From the IMG/VR virus record IMGVR_UViG_3300031951_000003, positions 248,001-312,000 of that record: a DNA stretch of 64,000 bases. One strand, written 5' to 3'. Made by a program: the position numbers and the translations under genes. Below the pieces are notes generated by a model. The model searched no databases. It saw only the letters and a program-made list of their open reading frames with translations, and had not been told where the DNA came from. How positions within the stretch are numbered: position 1 is the stretch's first letter; each line of letters starts with the position of its first letter. Of this stretch, positions 6,812 to 42,038 are shown piece by piece.

Positions 6812-7159
6812 ATGATTGTTGAAATTAATGAAAATTATTTTAATGTTAAAACATTGGTTGACCCAAAATCCCAAGCTATTGGGATGATGAGAAGAAAATT
6901 CGATGATTCATTCAATGGTTTATTATTTTTAATGGGTGGTAAAAAACAATGTTTTTGGATGAAAAATTGTATCATCCCACTTGATATAATAATGATAAAA
7001 AATAATGTTATTGTCAATATACATCACGACTGTCCTCCTTGTTTAGAGGAACCTTGTCCGAGTTATTGTGGAAATGGAAATATCGTATTAGAACTCGAGG
7101 GTGGGACCTGTGAAATGTTAGGGATTGAAGCTGGAGATACGGTAGAATATATCTTCTAA
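6812..7159 (+). CDS. DUF192-family protein
   Basis: GMM..R...GLLF...FWMKNCIIPLDI...VLEL.GG...GDTV pattern; start revised to ATG 6812. Confidence 0.85.
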   Translation: MIVEINENYFNVKTLVDPKSQAIGMMRRKFDDSFNGLLFLMGGKKQCFWMKNCIIPLDIIMIKNNVIVNIHHDCPPCLEEPCPSYCGNGNIVLELEGGTCEMLGIEAGDTVEYIF

Positions 7160-9312
7160 ACTGTGAAATCTCTCACAAAAAATTTACTTGACCTCATTCT
7201 CAAAAATATTGTTTTTGGTTTCTCAGGCACTGTTCCAAAAAATGGTATTGTGGTTGAACCTATACTAATATCTGAAATACCACCTGCTTTAGCAACATCT
7301 ACTGCAAAGGTTGCACAATTCGAATCACCACCCTCTGTCAAATCTATGAATGAGTAACTTCTTGGTTTACTAGCCTCGTTCACAGAGTCTGTGAAATTAG
7401 GTAATCTCATAACATTTGTCCACATTGTTAGATTTGGACCGTCTTTGAAAGTTTTGGCTTTACAAGTTCTTGCAACATCACCAGCATTTGTGAAGTTTCC
7501 TTGTGAATCTATAGTCGCAATTTTCCCCATTTCAGTTTTCAAAACCTTTCCGTTTCCATCGTTATCGTAAGGTCCAAACTCATATAATTTTACAATACCT
7601 GTATGGTCAACTAAAATACAACCTCCATGTCCAGTGGCATATATTTTGATTTCTCTCTTTCCAACTTGTTCATTCAAACCTAAATAATCCTCTACCCACT
7701 CCAATGCTCTTCCGTGGAATGCTAATATGCGAGCAATCCAAGAATCTGTCATTGAAGGTCTATATTTCGGAAAAACAAAGAACATAAAAAAACCTGATTG
7801 ATTTTTGTCTATGGGTTGAAGTGACTTAAAAACAAAATCATCCTTCTGTCTTGCAATTGATAAACTTGGTACTCTAATGTCCCCCGAAGAGGGATTGTAC
7901 TGTTCCTCCAATTTTGACTCAGATTGAGAAATTTTTTCCTTTAACTTTCTGAAGAAATCTGAAGCCAACATTTTTGTAAATTTTACATATGGTGCATCTT
8001 CTCTTTCAGGGTCATATCTATATTGACCTTCGGGTGGTCTTTTGGACCTACCAAGATAGTTCAATCCACTTATATTCGTGATACACTTGTGACCTCCAGA
8101 GTTTGCGTTGATTAATTCCCAAGCACTTACATTAATATTATCTAAGATACTTTTTTCTTCATCTGTTAATGATGTAAATGGTTTTGACATCATTTCTTTA
8201 AGTCTATTCAAAGCCTCTTCTCCTCTTTCTTGTTCTGCAAATTTTTCACCATAAACCGCATTAAAATCCTCGAATGTAAACCCAACACTTTCAGGGTTAA
8301 CACCTGTTTCACTAATCCATTTTATCGTTGATAACGGGACTTTTCTTTCCTTGAGTTGAGCTTCATACTTTGCAATGACCTCTTTAGCAATCTCTCCGAG
8401 ATTAACACCTTTGAGCTTCCTTTCCTTTTTAAAAGGATTGCATGATACTTGAAGTAATCCCATCGGCCATGCCATGATGAGAAAGTCTGCTTCAGGGTTA
8501 TTTCTAAATGGGGTATACCTGTCATAAGAGCCAGGCTTAACCATACTACCTCCACCATATTGGTAAATGATATTATCTTCAACATGGGGAAATCCTTTCA
8601 TTTGTTTTGCATAATCTTGTGCGTGTTTTTGTAGTTCTTCTGGTTTTGGTGCATTTGTATCTTTCATCCATGTTTTGATGTTACTAAGTATATTCATCAA
8701 AGATGGTTCTGAATTCATTACAAGTCGCTCCAAAAATCCTTTCTTGTTTTTGAATGCTAAAATGAGTTTGTTTATAACGAAACCCAATAACATTTTGTTT
8801 CTTTGTAACGGCTTTTCTTTATCTAATCTAAAAAGATAATTGACTACCTCCTCGGGACTTATATCTTGTCTAGCGAAATCTGCGGAGTCAACAGTGTTAA
8901 TCAATAAAACGTCAGATGAGGGAAATAAATCTTTGGGTGAAATTATTTGTGAGATTGTTTCCACGTTTGAACGTGCTTGTCTAAATGATTTCGAAGCACC
9001 TTTTTCCGCACCTATTTGTTTGTCATGATGGTCCGTGTGGATAACGAACATTGGTTTACCATGAGCAAAGTCAACCAAAACAGGCATGGTATCACCCTTA
9101 GCGTCATTCTTCTTAACCGCAAATTCTTTTTCCCCATATTGTATTACGTGAACATCTACCACATCAATACCATTGTTCTCAAGGTATTTTTTCATCGCAA
9201 TAGCAGTAGTTACACCATCTAAATCTTGGTGGAAATATATTTCAGCCTTCGGGTATCTTTTTCTTAATGCGGAAATATCTCTTAAACCTGTCTCAGTTAT
9301 TAGGTTCTTCAT
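7156..9312 (-). CDS. DHH-family phosphoesterase fused to a C-terminal His...Asn-Cys (permuted papain-like) domain
   Basis: HQDLDG, LVDF, TDHH and GGH motifs; C-terminal GHGG...YEFGPY...SNCATF. Confidence 0.7.
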   Translation of the reverse strand: MKNLITETGLRDISALRKRYPKAEIYFHQDLDGVTTAIAMKKYLENNGIDVVDVHVIQYGEKEFAVKKNDAKGDTMPVLVDFAHGKPMFVIHTDHHDKQIGAEKGASKSFRQARSNVETISQIISPKDLFPSSDVLLINTVDSADFARQDISPEEVVNYLFRLDKEKPLQRNKMLLGFVINKLILAFKNKKGFLERLVMNSEPSLMNILSNIKTWMKDTNAPKPEELQKHAQDYAKQMKGFPHVEDNIIYQYGGGSMVKPGSYDRYTPFRNNPEADFLIMAWPMGLLQVSCNPFKKERKLKGVNLGEIAKEVIAKYEAQLKERKVPLSTIKWISETGVNPESVGFTFEDFNAVYGEKFAEQERGEEALNRLKEMMSKPFTSLTDEEKSILDNINVSAWELINANSGGHKCITNISGLNYLGRSKRPPEGQYRYDPEREDAPYVKFTKMLASDFFRKLKEKISQSESKLEEQYNPSSGDIRVPSLSIARQKDDFVFKSLQPIDKNQSGFFMFFVFPKYRPSMTDSWIARILAFHGRALEWVEDYLGLNEQVGKREIKIYATGHGGCILVDHTGIVKLYEFGPYDNDGNGKVLKTEMGKIATIDSQGNFTNAGDVARTCKAKTFKDGPNLTMWTNVMRLPNFTDSVNEASKPRSYSFIDLTEGGDSNCATFAVDVAKAGGISDISIGSTTIPFFGTVPEKPKTIFLRMRSSKFFVRDFTV

Positions 9313-9683
9313 TAATATTTCAGAGTCAACAAGTATTTCGATTTATTAATCAAACCTAACATTTCATCTCTTAGATTCAATAAATCTGTATCATATCTCG
9401 AGTCCAATTGGTCAGAGATTCCAACTAAAAATTCTGTGATTCCGTCCATGAAATTCTGAATACTTAACTTACTGATGTCTTGAAACATCAATCCAAACTC
9501 AGGTTCAAATTCAGGTCTACCATACTTTCCCATCATGGTTTCAGTGAACTCATCAATGAGACCATCTAATCCCTCATAAATTGCACCGTAGGTTTTATGT
9601 TTTGCATCACCAAACGTCTGCCAGTGTAAAAATCTCCATTGAATTTGGATTTGGACTAATTTTTTTATCAATTCTTCTTTCAT
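9312..9683 (-). CDS. ferritin/Dps-like four-helix protein (DUF5856-like)
   Basis: LHWQT...AKHK...LIDEF.E..MGKYGR...LLNLRDEM...YLL. Confidence 0.75.
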   Translation of the reverse strand: MKEELIKKLVQIQIQWRFLHWQTFGDAKHKTYGAIYEGLDGLIDEFTETMMGKYGRPEFEPEFGLMFQDISKLSIQNFMDGITEFLVGISDQLDSRYDTDLLNLRDEMLGLINKSKYLLTLKY

Positions 9684-9698
9684 ATAATTTAAATATTA

Positions 9699-10913
9699 CT
9701 AAGGTAAAGGATTTAACGAACCCGAAAACATATTACTAAACATGTTTTGAACTGGATTATTTTCTTTCGGTTTTTCAGATGAACTTTGAGGTTTGTAAGC
9801 ACCAGAACCAAAAAGAGGTTGAATTTGCCCATACCCTACTTTACCTGAACCACCATCTTGACCTGCATCAGCGTTTATTGCTTGGTTAAAGTCCGACTCA
9901 AAATTATTTTGAGCTTCTTCTGTTTTATTATAGTTTTCCATATTTTTCAGAAGTTCGTCTTCACCAATTTTAGCCGCCAATTCATCGGGTCCGACAAAAT
10001 TTGCAATATTCATATAATCTAATAATCCCATCCACCATTTTGTTTGTCTCATTAAACTTCTTACGGATGCATTTCTATTCAATAGTTGAGGCATTCCTCT
10101 GAAAACACTTTTCCAAGACAAAATTCCTTTGGTTGTTCTATAACCTGAAAATAAACCTGGTGCTTCTTTAGCTAGTTTGGTAAGTTCTTCGAGTGCCGCT
10201 AGTTGTTTAGCTTTTGACCATACTCCAACAGATGTAGTTGCAGTTTTCAATCCTGTCATACCCCTCACTATTTCTTGACCTGTTTTTCTCAAAGGTGCTG
10301 TTGCTTTATTATAATTAGCGAATAAATCAAACCATTGTAAAACAGTTTTCTTTAACCCTCCCATCAATGGCATCGGAACTCTTTCGATATATCCTCTTAA
10401 CTTACCAGCGATTTTACTGAAAGCTGAAACAAATCTTCCTGTCACACCACCCATCGCGGTTATATTATCAAGCATTTTAGCCGCTTCGGCTGTTTTTCCT
10501 GCTTCAACCAAGGCGGTAACTTTTCTCAAATTCTTCACGCCAGGACCACCAATTTTGAGGGCTGCCATCATAGGTTTGGCAACGATGTCTCCAGCATATG
10601 GTAAAGCTGAAATGATTGATAATAATCCGAATAATTTATCTCCTTGTTTCAAATAAGAGATACCGTTTACTAAATCAACTACCCCTGTTGGGTCAAAAAT
10701 TCCAACGATATCACCAAGGGTGTTATACCACTTTGCTTCGTTTACTAATTTACCCTTTGATGGATATAGAACACACAGTGTTTCGACGATTTGTTTTTTT
10801 TCCTCTTTGGAAAACTTTGACCAACTTTCTTCGGCAAGCCTATAATTGTCTTGCTTGAGAATTTCTAAATTCAAAAGTTGGAGTTGTTTTTCAGAAATTA
10901 TAAATTCTGCCAT
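9699..10913 (-). CDS. probable internal virion protein with a pre-toxin-TG-like helical segment
   Basis: DIVGIFDPTGVVDLVNGISY..GD...LSIISALPYAGD; N-terminal IISE motif; TATTTAT promoter. Confidence 0.6.
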   Translation of the reverse strand: MAEFIISEKQLQLLNLEILKQDNYRLAEESWSKFSKEEKKQIVETLCVLYPSKGKLVNEAKWYNTLGDIVGIFDPTGVVDLVNGISYLKQGDKLFGLLSIISALPYAGDIVAKPMMAALKIGGPGVKNLRKVTALVEAGKTAEAAKMLDNITAMGGVTGRFVSAFSKIAGKLRGYIERVPMPLMGGLKKTVLQWFDLFANYNKATAPLRKTGQEIVRGMTGLKTATTSVGVWSKAKQLAALEELTKLAKEAPGLFSGYRTTKGILSWKSVFRGMPQLLNRNASVRSLMRQTKWWMGLLDYMNIANFVGPDELAAKIGEDELLKNMENYNKTEEAQNNFESDFNQAINADAGQDGGSGKVGYGQIQPLFGSGAYKPQSSSEKPKENNPVQNMFSNMFSGSLNPLP

Positions 10914-10945
10914 GGATACTTTTTCTTATAAATATCCCTCGGATA

Positions 10946-15023: not shown

Positions 15024-16784
15024 TTAATCAATTCTCATTACGTAAAACCATTGGTCTTGAATTTTCACCTCATCAGCATTCCCATCGTAAGAATTAAGTG
15101 TTTGCCCAAATCCATCAGCATCTATCACCCCTTGTATAAATTCATCTTTGTCTATAAATTGTTCCCAGTCAATCCCATGCTCATTTAAAAAACCTTCGGG
15201 GTCTCTCATAACATCATCAACTAATTCATCAACTTTTTCTTCAACCAAATCATCAGGGAATTCTCCATCAGGGTCGTTCTCAATATCATCGATTTCATCC
15301 TGATATTCTACTATCAATTCACTTAGTTCATCTATTTTATCTTGAATCGAATCATCATCTCCCCCGTCCCCAATTAGTTCCTCAAATCTCTCAATTTCTA
15401 CTTCGGTTCTTTTTATTCTCATTTTGAGAATTTCGATTTCTTCTTTTTGTTTGGAAGATAATTGTCTCTCACTTTCATCCAAATAAACCTCAGGATTTTG
15501 ATATACATCGTCCCCTAAGTAGTCTCTTGCATAGTCCGCGACTTGTTCATCGTCAATGAAACCTCTCGCAAACCCACTACTGAAACCGCCATAACCAATA
15601 TCGTCAATTAATGAATCCACCCTTTCCTCACAACTTGATTGCATTTCACCCTCCGTTCCCACCGCATATTTTCTATCACTCAAACCTGCATCTATTACCT
15701 CAAATTCCGTGCAATCATAATACTCTCCTGTGGGTATTATGTTGTATACATCAATTTTTTCCTCTAATTCATTCAACTCATCCTCTAAGTCACTGATTTC
15801 GTCTAAAATGTCTGTTTCTACTTCCTCACTATTATCGTATTGGTTTTTAAGTCTCTCGATTTCATCTTTAAGTCTCTGAATTTCTATTCTGTCCTCATTT
15901 GTCAACGCTGAAACGTCACTTGTGTCAACCAACCAATCTAAAAGGGCGTGGGCTTTCAAACCCTCTTCAGGACAATCGGGACCAAGAGCCCATTCATTTT
16001 CCATCCTTCTCTCCTCAGCATCGTCTCTCATTTGCCTTAATATTCTTGCTTGTCTTAGTGCTTCTTGTCTCTCTTTTTCTTTTTTCGCGGCTTCTTTGTC
16101 ATTAAAAATCTTTATTTGTTCAGAATACTCTGAGTTCATGTATTCAGTTATCTGATTAATTATCTCATTGTATTTAGCGGTGCCCACATGAGCAGGATAT
16201 ATATTTGTTTGTTGGTCTGTGGCCGTGAAAAAACTTTTGTTACCGTCAAATTTGTTGAGCAAGGCTACTTTGTAGAATGGGTCAGATGAATCAGCACTTC
16301 TATCTAAAATATAAAACAATTTACCCTCTGTGTTATAATAATTGAATTGGTGGTCTGAACTTGCCACGGTGCACCACTTTGTTCCTTTACCGTAATAGCA
16401 TGAAGCCTGATGTGTTTGAGGATTCACAACAAAAAATCTTCCATCATCGAAAACAACTTTACCACCCTCAACTTGTTTATAATCTCTTCTTGGTCTGTTC
16501 GCATATTTTTGTAATTCATCACTGAGTTCGGAAACACTTTTATATGAATTAATATCAGTTTTAGGTAGGTTTGATGAAATCTTATCAAATTCTCTAAGTT
16601 TTCTGACTAAGTCTTGAAAGTTAGATTCAAAGTTCATCACCTCAAAGTTTTTGGCAACCCAATCCCAAAATTTTTGAGGAACGTTATCAATGATTTTTTT
16701 CAATTGCTCCTCAGAAAATTTCGTTCCATACTTAGCTTTGAGTTCTTCTGATTTGTTTTCTAATATTAATTCTAAAATTTTCAT
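15024..16784 (-). CDS. PcfJ-like 'YG..T.WCT' domain fused to a very acidic C-terminal region; probable head-packaged protein
   Basis: HQASCYYGKGTKWCT motif; D/E-rich C-terminal half; start at ATG 16784 (MKILELILE). Confidence 0.7.
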   Translation of the reverse strand: MKILELILENKSEELKAKYGTKFSEEQLKKIIDNVPQKFWDWVAKNFEVMNFESNFQDLVRKLREFDKISSNLPKTDINSYKSVSELSDELQKYANRPRRDYKQVEGGKVVFDDGRFFVVNPQTHQASCYYGKGTKWCTVASSDHQFNYYNTEGKLFYILDRSADSSDPFYKVALLNKFDGNKSFFTATDQQTNIYPAHVGTAKYNEIINQITEYMNSEYSEQIKIFNDKEAAKKEKERQEALRQARILRQMRDDAEERRMENEWALGPDCPEEGLKAHALLDWLVDTSDVSALTNEDRIEIQRLKDEIERLKNQYDNSEEVETDILDEISDLEDELNELEEKIDVYNIIPTGEYYDCTEFEVIDAGLSDRKYAVGTEGEMQSSCEERVDSLIDDIGYGGFSSGFARGFIDDEQVADYARDYLGDDVYQNPEVYLDESERQLSSKQKEEIEILKMRIKRTEVEIERFEELIGDGGDDDSIQDKIDELSELIVEYQDEIDDIENDPDGEFPDDLVEEKVDELVDDVMRDPEGFLNEHGIDWEQFIDKDEFIQGVIDADGFGQTLNSYDGNADEVKIQDQWFYVMRID

Positions 16785-16871
16785 CAAGTTTTCTTTAATA
16801 AATATCTTTTTTTAATTATAATTGGTTGGAAGTAATATTTATATAAATAAAAACTAAAAAATCTTTTTACC

Positions 16872-17104: not shown

Positions 17105-17117
17105 GTATTTATATGAT

Positions 17118-18128
17118 ATGGAAAATGAATATTCTATACGTGGTTTCTTGGAATCATTCAATAATAATGACTTGGATGTAAAAAAATATTTTGGTGATTA
17201 TGAAACATGGTTCAATGTGTTGAAGAAAAGAGGTTTGATGGGTGAAATCGACCCGAAGAATGCTGCGGGTTCCGAAGATTGGCAAAATGAATATCTTTTG
17301 TGGTTATACGATAATGATAGAGAAAAATATTACAAATGGATGAATGAGATTTTATCTGATGTTGTAATAGAAGGTAAAGATGTTTATTGGCAAGGTGACA
17401 GAGTTGATTTAGCAATTTTATTTTGTGATGATAGAAGAGACGGTCCGAGTAGAGATACAATTGAAAGTATTTTAGTTGGTGAGGATGTTTTCGAACCTTA
17501 TTGGGACACAACCGATGATGTTTACAGAGATGTCATTGAAGAACTAACCAAAGAGAATTTAGAAATTTTTAAAGAAAGGATTGTTAAAGAATTATCAGGT
17601 CAACAGTTGAGTCCTGATACGGAAGAAATGGAGTTAATAGCCACTGAGCAAGGACATGAAAATTATTGGACTATAGATTCAGAAAATGTGACGAGAATAA
17701 TCGACGATGAGGAGTCCATGAATAGTTTACTAAAAGATGAGCTTGCCGATGTAAAATCTGATTTATACTCTGTTCATTCTAATTCATATAATTCTGCTTA
17801 CGAAAGTGAGGTATATAATAGCATTTTCAATAAATTGGATGAATATTTCAACACCGAAAAAAAACAATGGATAAATGTTCCCCACCCATACAAAAAAGAA
17901 ACTGTGGTTGAAAAATTCAAAATACCAATATATGATTTCGAAGGTATCGTGAATGATTTTTTACATTCTAACAAAGGTTATGGAAATTCAGGAACACTTG
18001 ATTACCATGGAAGTTTTATAGAAATAATTAGGGAAGAAAAGGATTGTCTCAGATTGTGGTTTCCTGATTACCCTGACTCAAGATTGCTTGACAAAAACAT
18101 AAATGAAATATTTTCTGATTATTTTTAA
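17118..18128 (+). CDS. acidic hypothetical protein
   Basis: Start revised to ATG 17118, 5 nt after TATTTAT. Confidence 0.8.
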   Translation: MENEYSIRGFLESFNNNDLDVKKYFGDYETWFNVLKKRGLMGEIDPKNAAGSEDWQNEYLLWLYDNDREKYYKWMNEILSDVVIEGKDVYWQGDRVDLAILFCDDRRDGPSRDTIESILVGEDVFEPYWDTTDDVYRDVIEELTKENLEIFKERIVKELSGQQLSPDTEEMELIATEQGHENYWTIDSENVTRIIDDEESMNSLLKDELADVKSDLYSVHSNSYNSAYESEVYNSIFNKLDEYFNTEKKQWINVPHPYKKETVVEKFKIPIYDFEGIVNDFLHSNKGYGNSGTLDYHGSFIEIIREEKDCLRLWFPDYPDSRLLDKNINEIFSDYF

Positions 18129-18910
18129 TGGCTTACGTAAAATACATATTAGTTGAACAAAGAGGCTTTACTCCAAGAAAAACTCCTCCACCAAACATCA
18201 AAAATATTTTATCCCAAATAGAACTTTTCGAGATGTATCCAAAGATTTTTGCTCTTGTCATCAAAGACGACAAATTAAGAGCAAGAGTTTTTATGAGGTA
18301 TCAGGAGTTTTATGAGTCAGATTCCGAGACATTTAGAGGAAAAGGTTTCAAATGGTATGACTACGTGAAACATTACAAGAAAAAGACCAAGAAAGATTAT
18401 TTCTCTTATCATGAAGATTGGGCAGGTTATAATATCCCTTGTAACTCAATTGAATCTTGTATGAAAGTTATTCCAGACGTAAATTTTTATGATTTGATAA
18501 TGTTTAGTGTAATAGATACGATTAGAACGTTAGTAGGTGGAGAGGATTTCTATTTAATTGGTATTGACCAAAGTAATGGTGAAGACCCTTCACTTATTTT
18601 TCACGAAGTAGCACATGGTCTTTGGTTTTCATCTCCAATTTATAAGAACAAACAAATGAAAAACATAGAAAGACTCGAGCCAAATGTAAGAGAATCGGTA
18701 GCAAGAAAAATAACTGGTATGGGATATGGAGAAAATGTGGTAGATGATGAGATTCAAGCCTATTTATCTACAGGGATAGGAGATAACATGACAAGAATCA
18801 AAAACATCAAACAAGCTCAATTACCTTTCAAACAAGTATTTGATTCTTATACAGGTAAAATCAAACCTAATAAAATAAACATAGATTGGAGGACTGATTT
18901 GAATGCCTAA
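18128..18910 (+). CDS. HExxH zincin-like protein
   Basis: IFHEVAHG plus downstream DEIQAY. Confidence 0.65.
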   Translation: MAYVKYILVEQRGFTPRKTPPPNIKNILSQIELFEMYPKIFALVIKDDKLRARVFMRYQEFYESDSETFRGKGFKWYDYVKHYKKKTKKDYFSYHEDWAGYNIPCNSIESCMKVIPDVNFYDLIMFSVIDTIRTLVGGEDFYLIGIDQSNGEDPSLIFHEVAHGLWFSSPIYKNKQMKNIERLEPNVRESVARKITGMGYGENVVDDEIQAYLSTGIGDNMTRIKNIKQAQLPFKQVFDSYTGKIKPNKINIDWRTDLNA

Positions 18911-19754
18911 ATTCATCAACATATTATCCGATATTTTATCTGAAGCTAAAAGATATAAATTCACACCTGAATTACTACAAAAAATTAATTCGGTCGTAGA
19001 AAACCTTTGGAATGACCGAAACAAAAATTACGGTAATAAGAAAGAGGTTGTTGATGTTATCCCCTTCAAAACTGCAAATGGTGTTGACGGTTTGGTAAAA
19101 GTGATTGTTAATCCAAGATTGAAATACTTGGGATTTATGGGAACTAAACCGAGTAAATCTTATGACCCCGCAGACATTTATATCGAGGTAAATCCAAAAT
19201 ATTACGAATCTAAGAAAAATCTTTATCTTACAATCTATCATGAGATGATACACGCCAGTGACCCAACTCAAAGTAGTTCTTGGTCTCCAAAATATATGTT
19301 GAGCTATGATGAAAAGTCTGATGAAAAGTATTGGGGTCATCCAATAGAATTCTTTGCGATATCAAATGAGTTCTTGGAAGGTCTTGTAAGAGAATTTGAA
19401 AGAAGAGCAAAAAGATTAAGAAAAATTGAAAACAAAGAGATTTTGGATAAGTCTTTGAAAAATATTCTCAACTATTTTGCCAAGGGTGAGCCATTAAATA
19501 AGCTCAGTCAAGACATTCTTTTCAGAATCAATGACGAACACGTAGGACAAGATTCATTCAAAGTTCTTAAGAATCTGACCGCAGATATGCCCCATTTGGC
19601 GGACTTACTTCCTGAAAGAGGTGAGGAACCATATTATTTACACTATGTCGAATTGATTAAGAAATTTAATCCTGAAATATGGAAAAAGTTCCTAAGTATG
19701 TTCTACAATACAACTTTCGAGATTAGAGACATTATCAACAAAAACTATAAATAA
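18903..19754 (+). CDS. HExxH zincin-like protein
   Basis: IYHEMIHA plus downstream HPIEFFA. Confidence 0.65.
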   Translation: MPKFINILSDILSEAKRYKFTPELLQKINSVVENLWNDRNKNYGNKKEVVDVIPFKTANGVDGLVKVIVNPRLKYLGFMGTKPSKSYDPADIYIEVNPKYYESKKNLYLTIYHEMIHASDPTQSSSWSPKYMLSYDEKSDEKYWGHPIEFFAISNEFLEGLVREFERRAKRLRKIENKEILDKSLKNILNYFAKGEPLNKLSQDILFRINDEHVGQDSFKVLKNLTADMPHLADLLPERGEEPYYLHYVELIKKFNPEIWKKFLSMFYNTTFEIRDIINKNYK

Positions 19755-31324: not shown

Positions 31325-31342
31325 GTTTATTAATTTAGATTA

Positions 31343-31372
31343 CAAAGATACAGTATTAATTTGAATTACAAA
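31343..31372 (-). promoter_or_regulatory. Bacteroidota sigma-A-type promoter
   Basis: TTTG-N18-TATCTTTG. Confidence 0.65.
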
Positions 31373-31374
31373 AA

Positions 31375-31653: not shown

Positions 31654-31663
31654 AGTGAAATGA

Positions 31664-32986
31664 TTATTCCTCACCTTCCAAATCCCACATATTGTTACCC
31701 ATGTCACTACCTTTTCTTTTGATACATTCAGGAACTTGACAATTGTCACTTCCTTTCAGATTAATAAAGAAAAGACTCGGCATGTTACACACACATTCAG
31801 GGATAGAAGTAAGTTGTTTGTTATTAATAAGTGCTAAGAACTTCAACTTTGGTAATTCACAAATTGAATCGGGCACAGTTTCAACACAATTATCAAGTAA
31901 TATCATTCTCAAGTCTTTGAATCTAGAAATCGATTCAGGAATGTTAATAATAATATTATTTTTGTCTCTATTTTGGATTTGAAATTCAGTCAAGGTAGAT
32001 GGTAAGTTATCTATCAAATCGTCTAAACCATAAAGGGCAATGAATTTTCCAATTGCACCATGAGAAAAACTATCAATAACAAGTTTTTCACCTCCAACAG
32101 TCAAACCTTTTGCAAATTCTGGTTTGAATAACGGTTTCAATTCAGACATTCTTCCATTGAGTAGCCCAACTAAATCTTGTTGACGGTCATCCTTGTCCAT
32201 AAATTGATTGGATGGGAAATGGAATTGAAATCTTTCAACAGGTAAACCTGTTTCAGAGGCTTTGTTAGGGTCATTTGGATTGAACACAACATATAATGGA
32301 CCGTCCTTAATATATCTATCAAACCAAGACAATCCAGGTGCAGAAGTGCACCATCTAGTCTCTCTATTATTTCCACCGTAAAAACATGCGGCTTCTTTTC
32401 CTGATAAACCCTTGTCTTCAATCTTAATCACTCTCCAATCTTCACCGTCATACATGAGTTCAGCACCAGGGTGAACTTCGGCAGTTTTTCTTTCTGCTTT
32501 AGTTGTTGTTGCCATCGTAAGGTCGAAGTCTTTAACTTCGTCATACAATTGGTCAGGAGTCAACTTCATTATATCCCTTTTTTCCAAAGGAATACGTTTG
32601 TAAAATCTTCCGAATTTCTTCAAATCATCTGTAACCTTATACAGGTCTTCCAAGAATGTTTCCTTTACTTGAGCAAGTTCTCTTTCATAACCCGTATCAC
32701 CAGGTTGTCTTTCAGTCTTAACGTTCAAGAAACTTTTGATGAGCCAGTTAACATACTTACCTGCCTTTATTTTTTCAAGTTCTTTGGAGTCTGCACTCTC
32801 AGGGTCAACGTTATTTAATTTAGTGGTAGGGTCTGCCTGCACCAATTTTAAAAATTCAGCCACGGTCATCTTGGGCTTTTGTTTTTTTCCCTTCTTGTCT
32901 TCAGTAGGTTTTGTTAAAGCATTTCTCAAAATCTCAAATCTTGATTGCTCCAACAAAATATCTTTAAGTAATGATGTAAATTTCAT
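31664..32986 (-). CDS. 'YG..T.WCT' domain protein with C-terminal leucine-rich repeats
   Basis: AACFYGG...TRWCTS; IPESISRFKDLRMILL / VPDSICELPKLKFLAL.NN / IPECVCNMPSLFFINL. Confidence 0.75.
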   Translation of the reverse strand: MKFTSLLKDILLEQSRFEILRNALTKPTEDKKGKKQKPKMTVAEFLKLVQADPTTKLNNVDPESADSKELEKIKAGKYVNWLIKSFLNVKTERQPGDTGYERELAQVKETFLEDLYKVTDDLKKFGRFYKRIPLEKRDIMKLTPDQLYDEVKDFDLTMATTTKAERKTAEVHPGAELMYDGEDWRVIKIEDKGLSGKEAACFYGGNNRETRWCTSAPGLSWFDRYIKDGPLYVVFNPNDPNKASETGLPVERFQFHFPSNQFMDKDDRQQDLVGLLNGRMSELKPLFKPEFAKGLTVGGEKLVIDSFSHGAIGKFIALYGLDDLIDNLPSTLTEFQIQNRDKNNIIINIPESISRFKDLRMILLDNCVETVPDSICELPKLKFLALINNKQLTSIPECVCNMPSLFFINLKGSDNCQVPECIKRKGSDMGNNMWDLEGEE

Positions 32987-33030
32987 CTACCACGAATTTA
33001 TTAATAAATATATTGATTACACAAAAATAA

Positions 33031-33870
33031 CTAATAATTCAATATCAAGAGCTCTTCACCCATATTTTGTTTCGTCCCTTTTTTCGCAGCAGCTGCTTTA
33101 GCAAACTTCTTCTTTTCCCATCTGAATCTATCTGTTGAATACCATTGACTTAAAAGGTCAAAATCGTAGTAAGATAAACTAAACTTACTTTGGACTGAAT
33201 TCAACACATTTGCCAATCTTTCGTGGTCTGCTCTGTCGAAATCATGGTTGGAATAGTAATTTTCAGTTTTCCAATATGGTGGGTCCAAGTAAATATAAGT
33301 TGACGGGGAGTCGTATTTCTCTATAACCTTTTGGAAATCCATATTTTCAACATGAGTAATCTTATTAAAGTGTTCGACCCATTTTGGATTAGATAGTTTG
33401 TCTCTGAAAGACAAATATTTTGAACGATACTTTCCCTTCAAATCTATAAAGTTAGAAGTTTCAGGTTTACTTCCACTGAACACTTGAGTGACAATGTAAA
33501 CGTATTTTGCAGCAACTTCGTAGTCAGGGTAATTTATAGTAAATCCCGATGAAAATAATTCAGTTTGATACTCTCTGAATCTATCCTTGTAACTTATGTC
33601 TGTAACTAATTTACCAAACTCTTGAACCGGTATGGTGTCCAAAACTCTTTGGAGTTCAGCAGGATTCTGAACACATTGAAATAGATTGTAGTTTAGTGGG
33701 TTGAAGTCATTGTAGACCACTCGTTTGAGGTTTGTGAATTTTTCTAAATTCATGTTGAAATAACACCAAAACATTCCCCCGAATGTTTCGACATATGTTT
33801 CCATATCCTCAGGATAGTATTCGACTATCCATTTTCCAATTTTTGATTTTCCTCCGATATAACTTAACAT
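33031..33870 (-). CDS. dam: Dam-type DNA adenine methyltransferase
   Basis: YIGGKS, YVETFGG, VYNDFN, YLDPPY. Confidence 0.9.
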   Translation of the reverse strand: MLSYIGGKSKIGKWIVEYYPEDMETYVETFGGMFWCYFNMNLEKFTNLKRVVYNDFNPLNYNLFQCVQNPAELQRVLDTIPVQEFGKLVTDISYKDRFREYQTELFSSGFTINYPDYEVAAKYVYIVTQVFSGSKPETSNFIDLKGKYRSKYLSFRDKLSNPKWVEHFNKITHVENMDFQKVIEKYDSPSTYIYLDPPYWKTENYYSNHDFDRADHERLANVLNSVQSKFSLSYYDFDLLSQWYSTDRFRWEKKKFAKAAAAKKGTKQNMGEELLILNY

Positions 33871-33906
33871 ATAAGAAATATAATAAAAAAAATCAAAAAA
33901 GCAAAT

Positions 33907-34083
33907 TTAGTTATAACAATTTTTGTAAGGTCTACATGAAGCTTTCTGAGTAAATCCCATATCTGAGCATGATGTAGATTTACAATATGATTTACTATAT
34001 TTCCTTGGTTTCTTAAATTTCTTTTGTTCTTTCTCGTCCAAATATTGGTAAAGAACTCTTTTAATAATTTGTTCCAAAATCAT
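33907..34083 (-). CDS. small Cys-containing basic protein (58 aa)
   Basis: MILEQIIKRVL...YC...C..MGFTQKASC...C; not in the ORF track. Confidence 0.7.
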   Translation of the reverse strand: MILEQIIKRVLYQYLDEKEQKKFKKPRKYSKSYCKSTSCSDMGFTQKASCRPYKNCYN

Positions 34084-34093
34084 AATTATAAAT

Positions 34094-34234
34094 ATGGCAT
34101 GTAGTAGTTGTAAATCAAATCGTCCAATAAATAGAGTTAAATGGGGCGTGTTAATTTTAGGAAGTTATATTGTTTTCTCATCTGTTTACGGAACAATCGA
34201 AATATTCAAAATTATAATAGAATTTTTTAAATAG
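34094..34234 (+). CDS. small MACSSCK membrane protein (46 aa)
   Basis: N-terminal CxxC plus one TM; not in the ORF track. Confidence 0.65.
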   Translation: MACSSCKSNRPINRVKWGVLILGSYIVFSSVYGTIEIFKIIIEFFK

Positions 34235-35147
34235 GTCTCTCGAATTTCAAATTGAGTTTAACATAAAAATCACCACCTTTATATCCTTTTCCTCTTAATC
34301 TTAAAGGTTTAGATGTGTCTATTATTTTTGGTGCTTGTAAATTTAAATCACCATCTGGATGTGGAATTAAAAATTTATCATTTTGTATTTGTTCCAAATT
34401 CAGTGTCAAATTATAAACCAAATCTGAATTAATCTTTTCAAACCCATCTTTCGGGACCATTTCCACTTGAATTACCAAATCCCCCATACCTCCGTTTTTG
34501 AAATCACCCAAGTTTGGTAGTTTGAGAAACTGTCCACTATCAATACCTTGTGGGACTTTGACCCTAATGCTATGAATGGTCTGACTTGTTCCTTTTCCAC
34601 CACACAAATAACACCTTTCAACTAAAATGGTTCCTTGACCATTGCAGTTCCCGCAAATTGTCCTTATTTGTTGAACCATGAATCCTGTCCCAAATGTTTT
34701 GATAAAGAAACCTTGACCACCGCAAGACCCACAGGTTTGATGCTGGCCCCCGTTACCTTGACAAGAATTACACGGAATATCTCTACTATATTGAATTTCC
34801 TTTTCCCCACCCAAATAGGATTCAATTGGTGAAACTTGAAGTCTCACAACTTTGTCTGGTGCATGCCTCGGTCTTTGTCCTTGGAAATGAGGATTGCGAC
34901 CAAACATGTTATCAAAGAAACTCTCAAAATTGGTTCCTTGATATGGGTTGGACTTTTGATTATTATACTGAGCTCTTTTTTCTCTGTCTCCCAAAACTTC
35001 GTAAGCTTCGTTTATCTCTTTAAATTTTTCAGCACCATCGGGATTGATGTCAGGATGAAATCTTTTTGAGAGGTTTCTGTAACTCTTTTTGATTTCATCT
35101 TCTGAGGCATTCTCTTCAACTTCTAGAATTTTGTAGTAATTTTTCAT
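34227..35147 (-). CDS. dnaJ: DnaJ chaperone
   Basis: J domain with HPD, four CxxCxGxG motifs, C-terminal domain. Confidence 0.95.
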   Translation of the reverse strand: MKNYYKILEVEENASEDEIKKSYRNLSKRFHPDINPDGAEKFKEINEAYEVLGDREKRAQYNNQKSNPYQGTNFESFFDNMFGRNPHFQGQRPRHAPDKVVRLQVSPIESYLGGEKEIQYSRDIPCNSCQGNGGQHQTCGSCGGQGFFIKTFGTGFMVQQIRTICGNCNGQGTILVERCYLCGGKGTSQTIHSIRVKVPQGIDSGQFLKLPNLGDFKNGGMGDLVIQVEMVPKDGFEKINSDLVYNLTLNLEQIQNDKFLIPHPDGDLNLQAPKIIDTSKPLRLRGKGYKGGDFYVKLNLKFERPI

Positions 35148-37450: not shown

Positions 37451-37489
37451 CTATGGAGAATATAATAAATTAAATTTCAATGTGAATTT

Positions 37490-39277
37490 TTACTGAGTCT
37501 TTCTGTCGTAACTAATAAGATTTTTCATCTTTTCCATTTCTTCAGAAATTATTTTTGATTTCTTGTCCTCAGTTGATTCTAATTGGTTGAATATTTTTGC
37601 AGATTTTTCAGTTGATGATTTTATTTTTTTGAGACTTCCAGTTGACTTGGTCTCACCTGCAACGTCTACAGGTTGAGGTTGTCTTTTATAAGATGCGTTT
37701 TGTTGTTCTGCACCGTATAGGTTGTCCTTATAATTTTTCATGAACTTTTCACCTACCTCACTCGGGACCACGTTACCTAACGCTTTACCATCTTTGTCCT
37801 TGACAGCATTACCTGTTTTTGAATTTCCTTTCAAATACATTTCGATTTTTTCATCTTCAGGTTTGATTTCATCATAAACAAGATTTGTCATACCAGGGTA
37901 TGCGAATGCATCAATATATTCATCGACTGCTTCAGACGGATGATACTTTTTTGTTTTTTCTTTCATACCTGAAAGGTCATAATTACTCTCTGGAAACGCC
38001 TCAGGGTTTTCACTAAATTCACCATTCGAACCTGATTTGAGATAATCCTTCATTTTTTTCACAACACTCTTAGCATAATCTTCATTTTCTTTTTTCGACG
38101 CGTTAAGAGCTTTCATTGTTTTTTTCAAACCTTCGGGTTCTTTCTTTGAGATGTTTGATTTTTCCTTTTTTTCTTTTTGCTCGATGACAATATTTTCAAT
38201 CAAATCTATAAGTTCATTTTCAGTGAAAACGATTTTATTTTCATTTTCCTTTATTCCTTTGAGGGTCAGAACTAAATTAACTTGTTTCAAAGTTTTTAAG
38301 TCCGAAGAAGACAATTTTTTATCCCCTTCAGCTTTCTTCATTAATTCTTTTTTCAATGATTTCAATTTTGATTGAGGAATTTTCTCATCATCTGGGACAT
38401 TCAATTTCTTGTGAAGTGCACCTTTTTTAATATCAGTTTTTTGAATCCATTTTTTTTCAGATTCTTTAGTTTCTTTTTTGTGATTACATTTACAATTCAT
38501 CATACCACACTTCGCACACTTCTTACCTTTAGATTCTTTAACATGATATTTTTTTCCATCTACTTCAAAAGAATCTCTTCCGTCTTTTTTAGCATCCGCT
38601 AAAGCCCCTGTAAAAGCATTTCCTTCTTCAGTCTCAGCTTCTTCTTCTAAACCTTTCATGATTCTAATTTTCATTGGACCATATTTGTCCTTATACATGT
38701 CGAAAAATTTCTTACCTTCTTCACCAGGTGCAAACCAATTAGTTTTTTCACCAAATTTTTGGAACATAGGTTCGAACTCATCGTATTCTTCTTCATCAAA
38801 ATCGAAATCAAAATCTCCTATATGAGCTCTATCTTTTTCATCAAACCAACCATGTTCATCGCTAAATGAACCAAATATTTTGTTTTTGAGGTTAGCTTTC
38901 ATTTTATTGTCTTCCAATCCTTTACCAACGTAAGTTGGTTCATTCTGAGACAATTCTTCTGCATCCTCTTCAGCCTCTTCATCACCTTCGTAATCACCAT
39001 GTGTTGATTTATCTTTATCATAAAAAAACCATTCATCCATTTCTTCGGTTTCTTTAGTCTCTTTCTTTTTACTTCTTAATTTTTTGAAGTCTGCAGCATC
39101 TAATTTACCCTTTGGCTCTGCAACATCTAATTTCTTTTGACCTCCTTTGAGTCCTTCCTCAACTTCAATTTCCTGCCATTCACCTTTTTCTTCGGTAATT
39201 TGTTTAACCTTGCTCTCGATTTCCTCATTGAGGATTTTAGAAATAAGATTGTCAATATGTTTTTGAAACTTGTCCAT
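37490..39277 (-). CDS. charged, multi-motif probable internal head protein
   Basis: K/E-rich; short modules (GGQKKLD...DFKKLR; EGNAFTGAL...DGKKY; KWIQ...GALHKKL...EKIP) separated by xxE sites; TATTTAT promoter. Confidence 0.6.
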   Translation of the reverse strand: MDKFQKHIDNLISKILNEEIESKVKQITEEKGEWQEIEVEEGLKGGQKKLDVAEPKGKLDAADFKKLRSKKKETKETEEMDEWFFYDKDKSTHGDYEGDEEAEEDAEELSQNEPTYVGKGLEDNKMKANLKNKIFGSFSDEHGWFDEKDRAHIGDFDFDFDEEEYDEFEPMFQKFGEKTNWFAPGEEGKKFFDMYKDKYGPMKIRIMKGLEEEAETEEGNAFTGALADAKKDGRDSFEVDGKKYHVKESKGKKCAKCGMMNCKCNHKKETKESEKKWIQKTDIKKGALHKKLNVPDDEKIPQSKLKSLKKELMKKAEGDKKLSSSDLKTLKQVNLVLTLKGIKENENKIVFTENELIDLIENIVIEQKEKKEKSNISKKEPEGLKKTMKALNASKKENEDYAKSVVKKMKDYLKSGSNGEFSENPEAFPESNYDLSGMKEKTKKYHPSEAVDEYIDAFAYPGMTNLVYDEIKPEDEKIEMYLKGNSKTGNAVKDKDGKALGNVVPSEVGEKFMKNYKDNLYGAEQQNASYKRQPQPVDVAGETKSTGSLKKIKSSTEKSAKIFNQLESTEDKKSKIISEEMEKMKNLISYDRKTQ

Positions 39278-39303
39278 TATGTGTGTTTTTAATATAAATA
39301 TCT

Positions 39304-40509: not shown

Positions 40510-40510
40510 G

Positions 40511-40756: not shown

Positions 40757-41166
40757 TATTTGGTTATTAAAAAGAACGTTAATACAGCAATCAGACCTGT
40801 GCCAAGGATAGAATTGAATTTACTTTTTACTTTCTCTTTCTTCAAATCAAATTCTAATTTTTTTGAATATCTTTCCATGATATCAAACTTTTGTTTCTCA
40901 GAATCAATTATTGTGAGATAATTCGTTTCTTTTGCTCTAAGAATTGTAATAACGCTGTCCTTGAGTCCTACTTTTTTCTCGGTTTCAATAAGTTGGAATT
41001 CAGTGAGTTTCAATTGTGCCTTTGCAGAATCTCCACTTATTAAGTCTTTCATTATTTGCTTAACCACAGGTAAGGGAAAACACTTTTCAGTCTTACTTGT
41101 ATCTATCTGTGAAAAAGCTATCGACTTCACGAGAAGTAAGCTTATCAATATTGCTAATTTTTTCAT
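40756..41166 (-). CDS. secreted coiled-coil protein with C-terminal TM (spanin-like candidate)
   Basis: Signal peptide ending AFS|Q; coiled coil; C-terminal hydrophobic helix; overlaps the upstream gene by 74 nt. Confidence 0.5.
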   Translation of the reverse strand: MKKLAILISLLLVKSIAFSQIDTSKTEKCFPLPVVKQIMKDLISGDSAKAQLKLTEFQLIETEKKVGLKDSVITILRAKETNYLTIIDSEKQKFDIMERYSKKLEFDLKKEKVKSKFNSILGTGLIAVLTFFLITK

Positions 41167-41455
41167 GATAAATTTCTTTGACAATTGTTTTTTGATTTTT
41201 TATTTTGCCGATAGTTTGGTCTACTTTTTCAATTTCATTGTTGAAATCAGAAATCTTGTTTTCCAATTTCAAATTATCTTCGTGAAGTTGCTTAATAACA
41301 ACATTGAGTGAATCAAGTTGTTGTTTTTGGTCGGCAGCCATTTGGACCCTTGGTGTCAGGAAAAATATTAAATAATAAAGGATGAACAATCCGAAAATAA
41401 CTTTAAGGATTGTTATGTAATGTTTCTTTAAGAAATTTAGAATTTTACTAATCAT
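41093..41455 (-). CDS. N-terminal TM plus coiled coil (i-spanin-like candidate)
   Basis: TM helix followed by heptad repeats. Confidence 0.5.
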   Translation of the reverse strand: MISKILNFLKKHYITILKVIFGLFILYYLIFFLTPRVQMAADQKQQLDSLNVVIKQLHEDNLKLENKISDFNNEIEKVDQTIGKIKNQKTIVKEIYHEKISNIDKLTSREVDSFFTDRYK

Positions 41456-41456
41456 A

Positions 41457-42038
41457 TTAAATTGGTGATTCTTTTGTTTTCTTTCTACTCGCCAAAACTT
41501 TACCCCATTTGGATTTGAATTTTTGGTAGAATTGTTGAAGTTTATTAATTAAATCCAGAAATTCTTGGTCAACCTTAACCATTTGTCCATTGATATAAAT
41601 TCCACTATCTTCCCCAATTGTGAAGATAAATTCCAAGTCTTCATCAATTAATTTCCCAGACCATTCAACATTATTTTGATAAACATTCAAGACATTGAAA
41701 TCTACAAGGTCAGAAACCTCTTCTACGAATTCATCCATGGTTTCTTGGAATGCAACTTTATCGTCTGTTGTAATATCCAATTCACTTCTGTCCTTACCAT
41801 GAAGGGCTAAGATTCCACCTGAAATTCTATATTTCTGAGTTTTGTCTTCAGGTGTTGGTTTTTCACCTTTCTCTTCATCAGAAACCGCAGTATCATATTG
41901 ATTGTCTCTTTCAATCCTTTTTTCAAGGTCTTTGGCGACATTGATTTGTGTCTCTTGTTCGAATATCAGTCTCGATTTTTTCAAAAGAGATTTGATTTCA
42001 TCGTATCTTTCTTCGTTAAGCATATTGTTCATTTTCAA
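41457..42038 (-). CDS. hypothetical protein
   Basis: 193-aa ORF. Confidence 0.75.
   Translation of the reverse strand: MKMNNMLNEERYDEIKSLLKKSRLIFEQETQINVAKDLEKRIERDNQYDTAVSDEEKGEKPTPEDKTQKYRISGGILALHGKDRSELDITTDDKVAFQETMDEFVEEVSDLVDFNVLNVYQNNVEWSGKLIDEDLEFIFTIGEDSGIYINGQMVKVDQEFLDLINKLQQFYQKFKSKWGKVLASRKKTKESPI

What the first reader, a model, noticed from the sequence alone, without database searches (positions are those of the whole stretch)
7156..42038. Family of unrelated late proteins sharing N-terminal (I/L)-x-E leader peptides: probable head-packaged, injected cargo
Seen: MKNLITE (DHH), MAEFIISE (TG-like), MKILELILE, MAYVKYILVEQ, MPKFINILSDILSEA, MKFTSLLKDILLEQ, MILEQ…YLDE, ISKILNEE / IENIVIEQ and RLIFEQ, mostly behind TATTTAT. 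Established: the T4 prohead protease cleaves after (I/L)-x-E, and short leaders ending in such sites target internal proteins to the capsid. Inference: a portable targeting tag loads a varied arsenal (phosphoesterase, zincins, LRR, acidic proteins) that is delivered with the DNA.
Basis: partly seen in the sequence, partly recalled or inferred. Interest (0 to 1): 0.62.

Follow-up and report, generated by a model that had tools for sequence, protein, structure and literature searches.

The report
Capsid-targeting leader peptides in jumbo phage
A 321-kb T4-like freshwater phage puts short, stereotyped N-terminal leaders ending in (I/L)-x-Glu on about 40 unrelated late proteins. These leaders are most likely tags that load the proteins into the capsid and are then cut off by the head protease, but the examples inside this window are only the weak fringe of that system.

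Summary
N-terminal (I/L)-x-E is enriched genome-wide (121 against 63 expected) and in late genes (57% against 33%).

The nine window examples are individually weak. Only two touch the stereotyped leader profiles, at E 0.008 and 0.039. Some of the listed sites are internal, and two of the proteins share a domain.

The idea itself holds up much better just outside the window. The genome encodes a T4 gp21-type protease with the catalytic His and Ser conserved. Its gp23-type capsid protein has L-I-N-E|A aligned with the T4 Glu65|Ala66 cleavage site.

At genome 183-241 kb and in the head module, 35-45 late proteins per genome carry a few leader classes, for example MKKIIRLTESDL..VKRVIKE|Q. In 93 distinct proteins conservation ends right after an invariant Glu. 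The bodies are unrelated (PPK2, C39 peptidase, PG-binding and others). The class-B leader occurs in 8,461 protein clusters from metagenomes, almost always at residue 1. Eight of nine large records that carry it have the same protease type.

Pfam, PHROGs and the paper searches do not describe it. Packaging, cleavage and injection remain inferred.

The parts
7156..9312 (-). 718-aa protein starting MKNLITE. Weak DHH N-terminal domain plus a TseH-like NlpC/P60 C-terminal domain. Last gene of the operon headed by 9699-10913.
   Evidence: Pfam PF25218 33 bits and PF01368 21 bits, the latter below its cut-off. The G004 orthologue starts MRKIISE. T4 Alt starts MELITE. Leader profile E 0.55 only.
9699..10913 (-). 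404-aa conserved all-helical protein with a class-A-like N-terminus (MAEFIISEKQL).
   Evidence: Leader profile E 0.039. In 22 homologues Glu8 varies, but E44 and E59 are invariant, and E59 sits in [LIV][IVL]xE just before the conserved core. phiKZ_IP scores 18.5 bits, below its cut-off.
10928..10934 (-). TATTTAT late-type promoter motif, 14 nt before the ATG of 9699-10913.
15024..16784 (-). 586-aa protein starting MKILELILEN, with a shared 'WCT' domain and an acidic C-terminal half.
   Evidence: Leader profile E 0.008. Its acidic half is homologous to a G001 protein that carries a significant class-B-like leader (AB profile 1.3e-4) and to a G004 protein with yet another N-terminus ending IISEQ. 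It shares a domain with 31664-32986.
16798..16804 (-). TATTTAT motif, 13 nt before the ATG of 15024-16784.
17106..17112 (+). TATTTAT motif heading the operon 17118-18128, 18128-18910, 18903-19754.
18128..18910 (+). 260-aa HExxH protein starting MAYVKYILVEQ.
   Evidence: Sequence. No Pfam family. No leader-profile match.
18903..19754 (+). 283-aa HExxH protein starting MPKFINILSDILSE.
   Evidence: Weak SprT-like and Peptidase_M91 hits, E 0.003-0.005. Leader profile E 1.7.
31664..32986 (-). 440-aa protein starting MKFTSLLKDILLEQ, with the shared 'WCT' domain and C-terminal leucine-rich repeats. TATTTAT at 33004-33010.
   Evidence: Weak LRR hits. More than 3,500 homologues, whose N-termini keep [IV][ILV][LM]EQ. 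The G004 orthologue has VILEN. Leader profile E 3.2.
33907..34083 (-). 58-aa ORF starting MILEQ. TATTTAT at 34088-34094, 4 nt before the ATG.
   Evidence: leader profile E 0.14
37490..39277 (-). 595-aa charged protein with an N-terminus ..NLISKILNE|E. TATTTAT at 39294-39300.
   Evidence: KIL[NS]E at residues about 14-18 is kept in 15 relatives at 49-71% identity and in the distant G001 and G004 homologues.
41457..42032 (-). 191-aa acidic protein with RLIFEQ at residues 21-26.
   Evidence: Sequence. The site is poorly kept in the G001 homologue. No leader-profile match.

Best explanation
The window belongs to a 321-kb freshwater jumbo phage that builds its head the T4 way. It has a gp23-type capsid protein, a portal, an acidic scaffold and a gp21-type (Peptidase S77) prohead protease.

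In this phage and its relatives, about 35-45 late genes per genome start with one of a few stereotyped amphipathic leaders. Most of these genes have their own TATTTAT promoter. All leader classes end in hydrophobic-(I/L)-x-Glu followed by Gln or Asn. The commonest class (class B) has a second conserved L-T-E site inside it.

I infer the following mechanism:
- The leader docks the protein onto the scaffolding core of the prohead, as the 10-residue capsid targeting sequence of the T4 internal proteins does.
- The prohead protease then cuts after the conserved Glu residues. This frees the mature protein inside the capsid and breaks the leader into small peptides.
- At least some of the cargo leaves with the DNA at infection. 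The cargo includes PPK2, a C39-type cysteine peptidase, peptidoglycan-binding and NlpC/P60-like proteins, and many small proteins of unknown function.

What is shown:
- the head-gene families and the conserved capsid-protein cleavage site;
- the leader families and their sharp boundary at Glu;
- the unrelated bodies;
- the peptide-level conservation;
- the almost exclusively N-terminal position;
- the shared late promoter motif;
- the co-occurrence with the protease.

What is inferred: binding to the core, cleavage and ejection.

The nine window proteins are not members of the stereotyped classes. At best they carry minimal propeptides like that of T4 Alt (MELITE). I put the chance for each at about 0.3-0.5. 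9699-10913, 15024-16784, 37490-39277 and 7156-9312 are the better candidates.
For: Head system:
- S77 protease at genome 107417-108133(-), 77 bits. The His85 and Ser140 columns (T4 numbering; that these are the catalytic residues is my recollection of the T4 gp21 literature) are invariant, and G-I-L-I-E aligns with the T4 L-L-I-E9 site.
- gp23-family capsid protein, 207 bits. Its L-I-N-E|A aligns with the column of T4 F-L-T-E65|A.
- T4 gp21 cuts after L/I-x-E. Its propeptides are 7-65 residues long, and the capsid targeting sequence is portable (PMC9026906; PMC3012670).

Leaders:
- Among proteins with no body homology, 548 pairs share at least 11 of 24 N-terminal residues. The same test gives 1 pair for internal segments and 0 for C-terminal segments.
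- The clusters hold 90, 32, 15 and 6 proteins across four genomes.
- 160 leader-profile hits are N-terminal against 7 internal, giving 35-45 proteins per genome.
- In 93 distinct class-B proteins the information content is at least 3 bits at most positions. This runs up to a 100% conserved Glu with I or L at P3. Gln follows in 70%, and then the content drops below 0.8 bits.
- At columns with the same residue, 42% of cases use a different codon.
- Bodies belong to different Pfam families.
- Homologous bodies carry different leader classes.

Spread and linkage:
- 8,461 clusters at 50% identity match at E <= 0.001, and 141 of the best 150 match at the N-terminus.
- 8 of 9 large records that carry the leader have an S77 protease.
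- The TATTTAT motif is shared with the head and tail genes.
- The N-terminal motif is enriched in late genes in all four genomes.
Against: - There are no virion proteomics, N-terminal sequencing or expression data.
- No cultured relative carries the leaders.
- The leaders show no sequence similarity to the T4 capsid targeting sequence.
- The substrate pocket of the protease was not analysed, so its specificity is inferred from one aligned capsid-protein site.
- The protease-leader complex prediction gave no answer.
- About 40 different cargo species per capsid is far more than the three T4 internal proteins plus Alt.
- The window candidates do not match the leader profiles.
- In the 9699-10913 family the proposed Glu8 is replaced in many homologues.
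- My gene calls are crude: longest ATG-initiated ORFs only.
Confidence: 0.55

Rival explanations
1. For the nine window proteins specifically, the (I/L)-x-E strings are chance or ordinary amphipathic N-terminal helices in an AT-rich proteome rich in I, L, K and E. On this reading they are not targeting leaders. The real leader system is confined to the stereotyped classes elsewhere in the genome.
For: - The motif occurs in 33% of non-late N-termini, and the stricter form in 13-16%.
- Seven of the nine have leader-profile E above 0.1.
- They share at most 9 of 24 residues with non-homologous proteins.
- Glu8 is not conserved in the 9699-10913 family.
- In 7156-9312 the DHH motif starts at about residue 28, so residues 1-22 may simply be the first helix of that fold.
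Against: - A residual twofold excess of the motif remains in late genes after the stereotyped leaders are removed (27% against 13%, p 1.6e-8).
- KIL[NS]E, [IV][ILV][LM]EQ and [IL]I[ST]E are kept in distant orthologues.
- A homologue of 15024-16784 carries a significant class-B-like leader.
Confidence: 0.4
2. The stereotyped leaders are shared partner-binding helices with no link to the capsid. They might bind a common chaperone, inhibitor or immunity protein, serve as a degradation signal, or direct proteins to the tail, the baseplate or another phage-made structure. The terminal Glu would then be conserved for binding, not for cleavage.
For: - Nothing here shows where the proteins go.
- The leader can occur internally in some metagenomic proteins.
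- The complex test gave no support.
- The number of cargo species is very high for one capsid.
Against: - All leader classes differ in sequence yet converge on hydrophobic-(I/L)-x-E followed by Q or N exactly where conservation ends.
- That is the T4 protease motif and resembles the aligned capsid-protein site.
- The leader co-occurs with the S77 protease.
- Two leader genes sit inside the head module next to the capsid gene.
Confidence: 0.2
3. The conserved 5' ends act at the nucleic-acid level. They could be a translation-initiation context for leaderless late mRNAs, or homology blocks that drive cassette shuffling like the promoter-stem-loop cassettes of T4-type phages. The peptide would then be a by-product.
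For: - TATTTAT ends only 4-6 nt before the ATG in about half of the late genes, so many late mRNAs may be leaderless.
- Each leader gene has its own promoter, and the genes are arrayed in tandem.
Against: - 42% of identical-residue columns use different codons, and third codon positions are far less conserved than second positions (0.54 against 0.81).
- Structural genes with the same promoter lack the leaders.
- In-frame internal copies exist.
Confidence: 0.05

Closest known systems
[quoted passage not shown]
   Same: A short N-terminal leader on otherwise unrelated, fast-evolving proteins. It ends in (L/I)-x-E, is removed by the gp21-type prohead protease, and is made late with the head genes. 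The same protease and capsid-protein families are present here.
   Different: - There is no sequence similarity to MKTYQEFIAE.
- The commonest leader here is 22 residues long, with two conserved Glu sites.
- There are at least four leader classes rather than one.
- There are 35-45 carriers per genome rather than three.
- The cargo includes sizeable enzymes.
- Packaging and cleavage are not demonstrated here.
T4 Alt (ADP-ribosyltransferase packaged in the head and injected)
   Same: A large enzyme with a very short N-terminal propeptide. The T4 record reads MELITE, and PMC9026906 gives a 7-residue propeptide. Window 7156-9312 starts MKNLITE, and class A starts MKYIITE.
   Different: There is no body homology. 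The window enzyme looks like a DHH and NlpC/P60-type hydrolase. C-terminal processing, as in Alt, was not examined.
Head, inner-body and ejection proteins of phiKZ, 201phi2-1 and SPN3US processed by gp175/gp245
   Same: These are jumbo phages with dozens of head proteins, many carrying propeptides cut after Glu by a gp21-related protease. Their propeptides hold redundant sites (PMC9026906).
   Different: - Their cleavage motif is S/A-x-E rather than (I/L)-x-E.
- No stereotyped portable leader is described for them in the papers I read.
- The present phage has a much closer T4-type protease and capsid protein.
- PF12699 matches fall below its cut-off.
Phage P1 Dar anti-restriction proteins loaded into the capsid
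   Same: Head-packaged, injected counter-defence proteins whose N-terminal regions are needed for packaging. This is from my own knowledge. PMC9024508 appeared in the paper search but I did not read it.
   Different: Different head lineage and no S77-type processing motif. Not compared here by sequence.

Membership tests
T4-type CTS/propeptide substrates of the gp21 prohead protease | The phage encodes a gp21-family (Peptidase S77) protease with the catalytic His and Ser. | tested here: met
   PF03420 at 77 bits. The His85 and Ser140 columns (T4 numbering) are invariant in an alignment with T4 gp21.
T4-type CTS/propeptide substrates of the gp21 prohead protease | gp23-type major capsid protein whose propeptide ends at (L/I)-x-E in the T4 position. 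| tested here: met
   PF07068 at 207 bits. L-I-N-E|A aligns with T4 F-L-T-E65|A, and the site is conserved in G001, G003, G004 and phage immuto.
T4-type CTS/propeptide substrates of the gp21 prohead protease | N-terminal leader that ends in (L/I)-x-E. | tested here: met
   Present in all nine window proteins as strings. In class B the Glu is 100% conserved, with I or L at P3 in 97%.
T4-type CTS/propeptide substrates of the gp21 prohead protease | The same leader on proteins whose mature parts are unrelated (genome-wide classes). | tested here: met
T4-type CTS/propeptide substrates of the gp21 prohead protease | The same leader on proteins whose mature parts are unrelated (the nine window proteins). 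| tested here: inconclusive
   Two reach the leader profiles marginally (E 0.008 and 0.039) and seven do not. They share at most 9 of 24 residues with non-homologous proteins. Orthologues keep the motif.
T4-type CTS/propeptide substrates of the gp21 prohead protease | Sequence similarity to the T4 CTS (MKTYQEFIAE). | tested here: not met
   The T4 IPI, IPII, IPIII and Alt N-termini score E above 3 against all four leader profiles. The leaders work like the CTS but are not homologous members by sequence.
T4-type CTS/propeptide substrates of the gp21 prohead protease | Late expression together with the head genes. | tested here: inconclusive
   The TATTTAT motif is shared with the scaffold, protease, portal and tail genes. 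There are no transcript data.
T4-type CTS/propeptide substrates of the gp21 prohead protease | Protein present in the capsid, N-terminus processed, ejected with the DNA. | not testable with these tools
   No isolate and no proteome. The complex prediction gave no answer.
phiKZ-like internal head proteins (PF12699) | Match to the family profile above its gathering score. | tested here: not met
   9699-10913 scores 18.5 bits against a cut-off of 27. The best match in the whole genome is 11.8 bits, and control genomes also give hits at that level.
Sec or lipoprotein signal peptides | Hydrophobic core after a basic N-terminus. | tested here: not met
   The leaders are charged and amphipathic. True signal peptides in these genomes form separate clusters (clusters 4 and 6).

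The most novel reading that the evidence does not exclude
The 22-residue class-B leader and its sister classes are a previously unannotated, metagenome-wide 'address label for the capsid'. On this reading, thousands of distinct proteins in abundant freshwater T4-like jumbo phages are loaded into the head through it, released by the prohead protease, and injected as a large, rapidly changing arsenal of take-over and counter-defence effectors amounting to about 10% of the genes of each phage.
Probability: 0.45. Interest if true: 0.8.

Novelty: new variant of a known kind. Interest (0 to 1): 0.66.

Why it matters
If the leaders are capsid-targeting propeptides, they give a sequence-only way to list the injected proteins of a large group of uncultured phages. 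That means 8,461 protein clusters for one leader class alone. Most have no known function and would be prime candidates for anti-defence or host take-over factors.

It would also show that the T4 internal-protein principle scales from three proteins to dozens per virion. And it would provide a ready-made tag for packaging foreign proteins into phages of Bacteroidota-like hosts.

For annotation, the leader classes deserve profile models of their own. None exists in Pfam or PHROGs.

Tried and rejected
- Megablast of the window against GenBank phages found no match.
- tblastn of the 24-residue leader against GenBank phages found no match.
- The head-module leader protein matched cultured phages only through an unrelated small C-terminal motif.
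- The leader profile gave nothing in phages immuto, Mel-JY01 and RM378, and one weak hit in a 484-kb uncultured phage.
- The first leader alignment was too diverse for the search for related loci.
- Complex prediction of the protease with the first 45 residues of a class-B protein gave no answer (score 0.00), which is evidence neither for nor against binding.
- The AlphaFold2 model of 9699-10913 is poor (pLDDT 61, pTM 0.38; all helical), and the BFVD search had nothing at E below 0.05. I draw no fold conclusion from it.
- The Atlas search on the domain shared by 31664-32986 and 15024-16784 returned only viral hypothetical proteins, with a sub-threshold PcfJ lead.
- Ranking all proteins by [IL]xE density does not single out the head-core proteins. 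The top ranks are spurious antisense ORFs of the collagen genes.
- The isoelectric point of the cargo is only slightly higher than that of other proteins (7.1 against 6.0), which is not diagnostic.
- Paper searches for the leader strings found nothing relevant.

Full report
**What the window is.** The window is bases 248001-312000 of a 321,139-bp virus record with direct terminal repeats. The DNA is about 33% G+C. It recurs in freshwater and lake metagenomes from at least nine studies. GenBank phages hold no close relative. By capsid protein, the nearest are an uncultured huge phage, Microcystis phage Mel-JY01, Flavobacterium phage immuto and Rhodothermus phage RM378, at 37-45% identity. Signal peptides of the Bacteroidota style and an SprB repeat point to a Bacteroidota host.

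**The head system is of the T4 type.** At genome 100-116 kb lie several head genes:
- a gp23-family capsid protein (PF07068, 207 bits);
- an acidic 525-aa scaffold-like protein;
- a Peptidase S77 (gp21-family) prohead protease (77 bits);
- genes that by position and size look like the portal and the large terminase.

Aligned with T4 gp21, the His85 and Ser140 columns are invariant. That these are the catalytic pair is my recollection of the T4 literature. The protease's own G-I-L-I-E aligns with T4 L-L-I-E9. Aligned with T4 gp23, the capsid protein has L-I-N-E|A in the column of the T4 maturation site F-L-T-E65|A. The site is conserved in three related jumbo genomes and in phage immuto. T4 gp21 cuts after L/I-x-E, removes N-terminal propeptides of 7 to 65 residues, and the 10-residue leader of the internal proteins is a portable capsid targeting sequence (PMC9026906; PMC3012670). 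A T4-like specificity for this phage is therefore a reasonable inference, but it rests on one aligned site.

**Checking the observation.**
- TATTTAT is a strong upstream signal. 108 of 398 crude gene calls have it within 60 nt, against 6.5 expected.
- It ends 4-25 nt before the ATG. It precedes the scaffold, protease, portal and large tail and baseplate genes, so I read it as the late promoter.
- Five of the nine candidates have it directly. Three more follow in tightly packed operons headed by it. 41457-42032 lies further down a gene string whose only such motif is at 43683-43689.
- [IL]xE with the Glu at residues 5-13 occurs 121 times against 63 expected from position-specific composition. 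The controls E-x-[IL], [IL]-E and [IL]-x-x-E are flat.
- Late genes carry an N-terminal [IL]xE in 57% of cases against 33% for the rest. The stricter two-hydrophobic form gives 37% against 16%. The same holds in three related genomes.

So the signal is real at genome scale, but a single occurrence says little.

**The strong signal lies beside the window.** Listing the N-termini genome-wide showed dozens of small and medium late genes, mostly at 183-241 kb. Two of them sit next to the capsid gene. They carry a few stereotyped starts:
- class A: MKYIITESQ...(I/L)xEQ;
- class B: M-x-K-I-(I/V)-(K/R)-L-T-E-S-D-L...V-I-K-E-Q;
- class C: MNLQENI.R.KE.MG...;
- smaller classes.

I fetched three related jumbo genomes: G001 (296 kb), G004 (294 kb) and G003 (269 kb). 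The results across the four genomes were:
- Among 1,242 proteins, pairs with no body homology share at least 11 of 24 N-terminal residues 548 times. Internal 24-mers do so once, and C-terminal 24-mers never.
- The resulting clusters hold 90 (A+B), 32 (C), 15 and 6 proteins. Ordinary signal peptides form separate clusters, which serves as a built-in positive control that the method finds targeting signals.
- Profiles of the four classes hit 160 N-termini and only 7 internal places. That is 35-45 proteins per genome, about a tenth of the genes.

**Properties of the leaders.**
- In 93 distinct class-B proteins from four genomes and 80 IMG/VR loci, most positions carry at least 3 bits of information. 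This runs up to a Glu that is conserved in 100% of them although it was not part of the selection pattern. The P3 residue is I or L in 97%, and Gln follows in 70%. From the next residue on, conservation falls below 0.8 bits.
- All classes differ in sequence, yet each ends in hydrophobic-(I/L)-x-E followed by Q or N. Class B has a second invariant L-T-E.
- After the first 35 residues are trimmed, most carriers show no BLAST similarity to one another.
- Their bodies include PPK2 (238 bits), a C39-type peptidase that starts at residue 29 right after the leader, a peptidoglycan-binding domain, MORN repeats and a nucleoside deoxyribosyltransferase.
- Homologous bodies can carry different leader classes.
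- Conservation is at the peptide level. 42% of columns with the same residue use different codons, and third codon positions are 54% identical against 81% for second positions.

**Spread.** The class-B profile finds 8,461 cluster representatives at E <= 0.001 among 1.84 billion proteins. Of the best 150, 141 match at the N-terminus. A few proteins carry a second in-frame copy further in. All hits come from metagenomes and are unnamed. Pfam and PHROGs have no model for the leaders, and string searches of the paper library found nothing. Eight of nine large records that carry the leader encode an S77 protease. The exception is a fragment estimated at 49% complete. Cultured relatives lack the leader.

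**What this means for the nine window proteins.** They are not members of the stereotyped classes.
- Only 15024-16784 (E 0.008) and 9699-10913 (E 0.039) touch the A+B profile. None shares more than 9 of 24 N-terminal residues with a non-homologous protein.
- After the stereotyped carriers are removed, late genes still have twice the background rate of an N-terminal hydrophobic-hydrophobic-x-E (27% against 13%, p 1.6e-8). Roughly half of such late proteins may therefore carry a meaningful site.
- 37490-39277 keeps KIL(N/S)E near residue 17 in 15 relatives and in two distant homologues.
- 31664-32986 keeps its site ending in EQ across its listed homologues.
- The orthologue of 7156-9312 reads MRKIISE, which recalls T4 Alt MELITE.
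- The acidic half of 15024-16784 is joined to a significant class-B-like leader in G001.
- In the 9699-10913 family the Glu of IISE is often replaced. E59, in (L/I/V)(I/V/L)xE just before the conserved core, is invariant and is the better candidate site.
- 41457-42032 and the two HExxH proteins have nothing beyond the string itself.
- The cargo labels are only partly borne out. DHH is weak, but a TseH-like NlpC/P60 domain is present. LRR and zincin hits are weak. 'TG-like' is unsupported.

**Mechanism and rivals.** The best reading is a scaled-up, non-homologous analogue of the T4 capsid targeting sequence. An amphipathic leader docks late proteins on the prohead core, and the S77 protease cuts after the conserved Glu residues. 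The two sites would break the leader into small peptides, as happens with T4 and phiKZ propeptides.

The rivals are:
- a shared partner-binding helix unrelated to the capsid;
- chance, for the window cases only;
- a nucleic-acid-level role, which the codon data argue against.

None of packaging, cleavage or ejection was or could be tested here. A protease-leader complex prediction gave no answer.

**Verdict.** The finding points to a real and apparently undescribed leader system. Its clear members lie just outside the stated interval.

Noticed in passing
window 4767-5172 (-): A full-length GOLLD RNA (Rfam RF02032, 322 bits, model positions 1-416 of 416) lies in the ORF-free gap between 4829 and 6378. 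No tRNA gene was found in the window.
   Followed up: partly
genome-wide; in the window for example 17106-17112 (+) and 34088-34094 (-): The TATTTAT late-type motif ends only 4-6 nt before the ATG in about half of the roughly 108 genes that have it. Many late mRNAs are therefore probably leaderless. A second group has a 12-17 nt A-rich spacer.
   Followed up: partly
window 19768-27156 (-): Three large collagen-repeat proteins lie here. At least the 874-aa one has a Peptidase_S74 chaperone domain at its C-terminus. G+C is 48-54% against a 33% background, and the antisense frames give long spurious ORFs.
   Followed up: partly
window 57338-60187 (-); clusters 4 and 6: An SprB repeat sits in a 949-aa protein, and several phage proteins have Bacteroidota-style signal peptides. 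Together these suggest a Bacteroidota host. The DNA recurs in freshwater and lake metagenomes of at least nine studies.
   Followed up: partly
related genome G003 (loci L123-L136): 31291-31773 and 233494-233940; 33213-34976 and 236064-237947: This 269-kb relative encodes two S77 proteases and two gp23-like capsid proteins that are only 29% identical. It has either two head modules or an assembly chimera.
   Followed up: no
proteins P0197, P0203, P0204, P0207, P0226: Some metagenomic proteins carry the class-B leader twice, at the N-terminus and again in frame 100-300 residues further in, without a start codon. They may be polyprotein-like fusions that would be cut into pieces if the leader is a cleavage module.
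   Followed up: partly
window 42016-42621 (-), 43706-44503 (-), 34227-35147 (-), 30569-31324 (-), 9312-9683 (-): Amidase_2 endolysin, a phage sigma-70 factor (regions 2 and 4), a DnaJ-like protein with a zinc-finger region, DUF932 and DUF5856.
   Followed up: no
window 15024-16784 (-), 31664-32986 (-); genome 129781-131262 (+), 162271-163260 (+): Four paralogues share an unannotated domain with a conserved W-C-T motif. More than 3,500 close homologues of the LRR-bearing one exist in metagenomes. An Atlas lead to PcfJ is below any threshold.
   Followed up: partly
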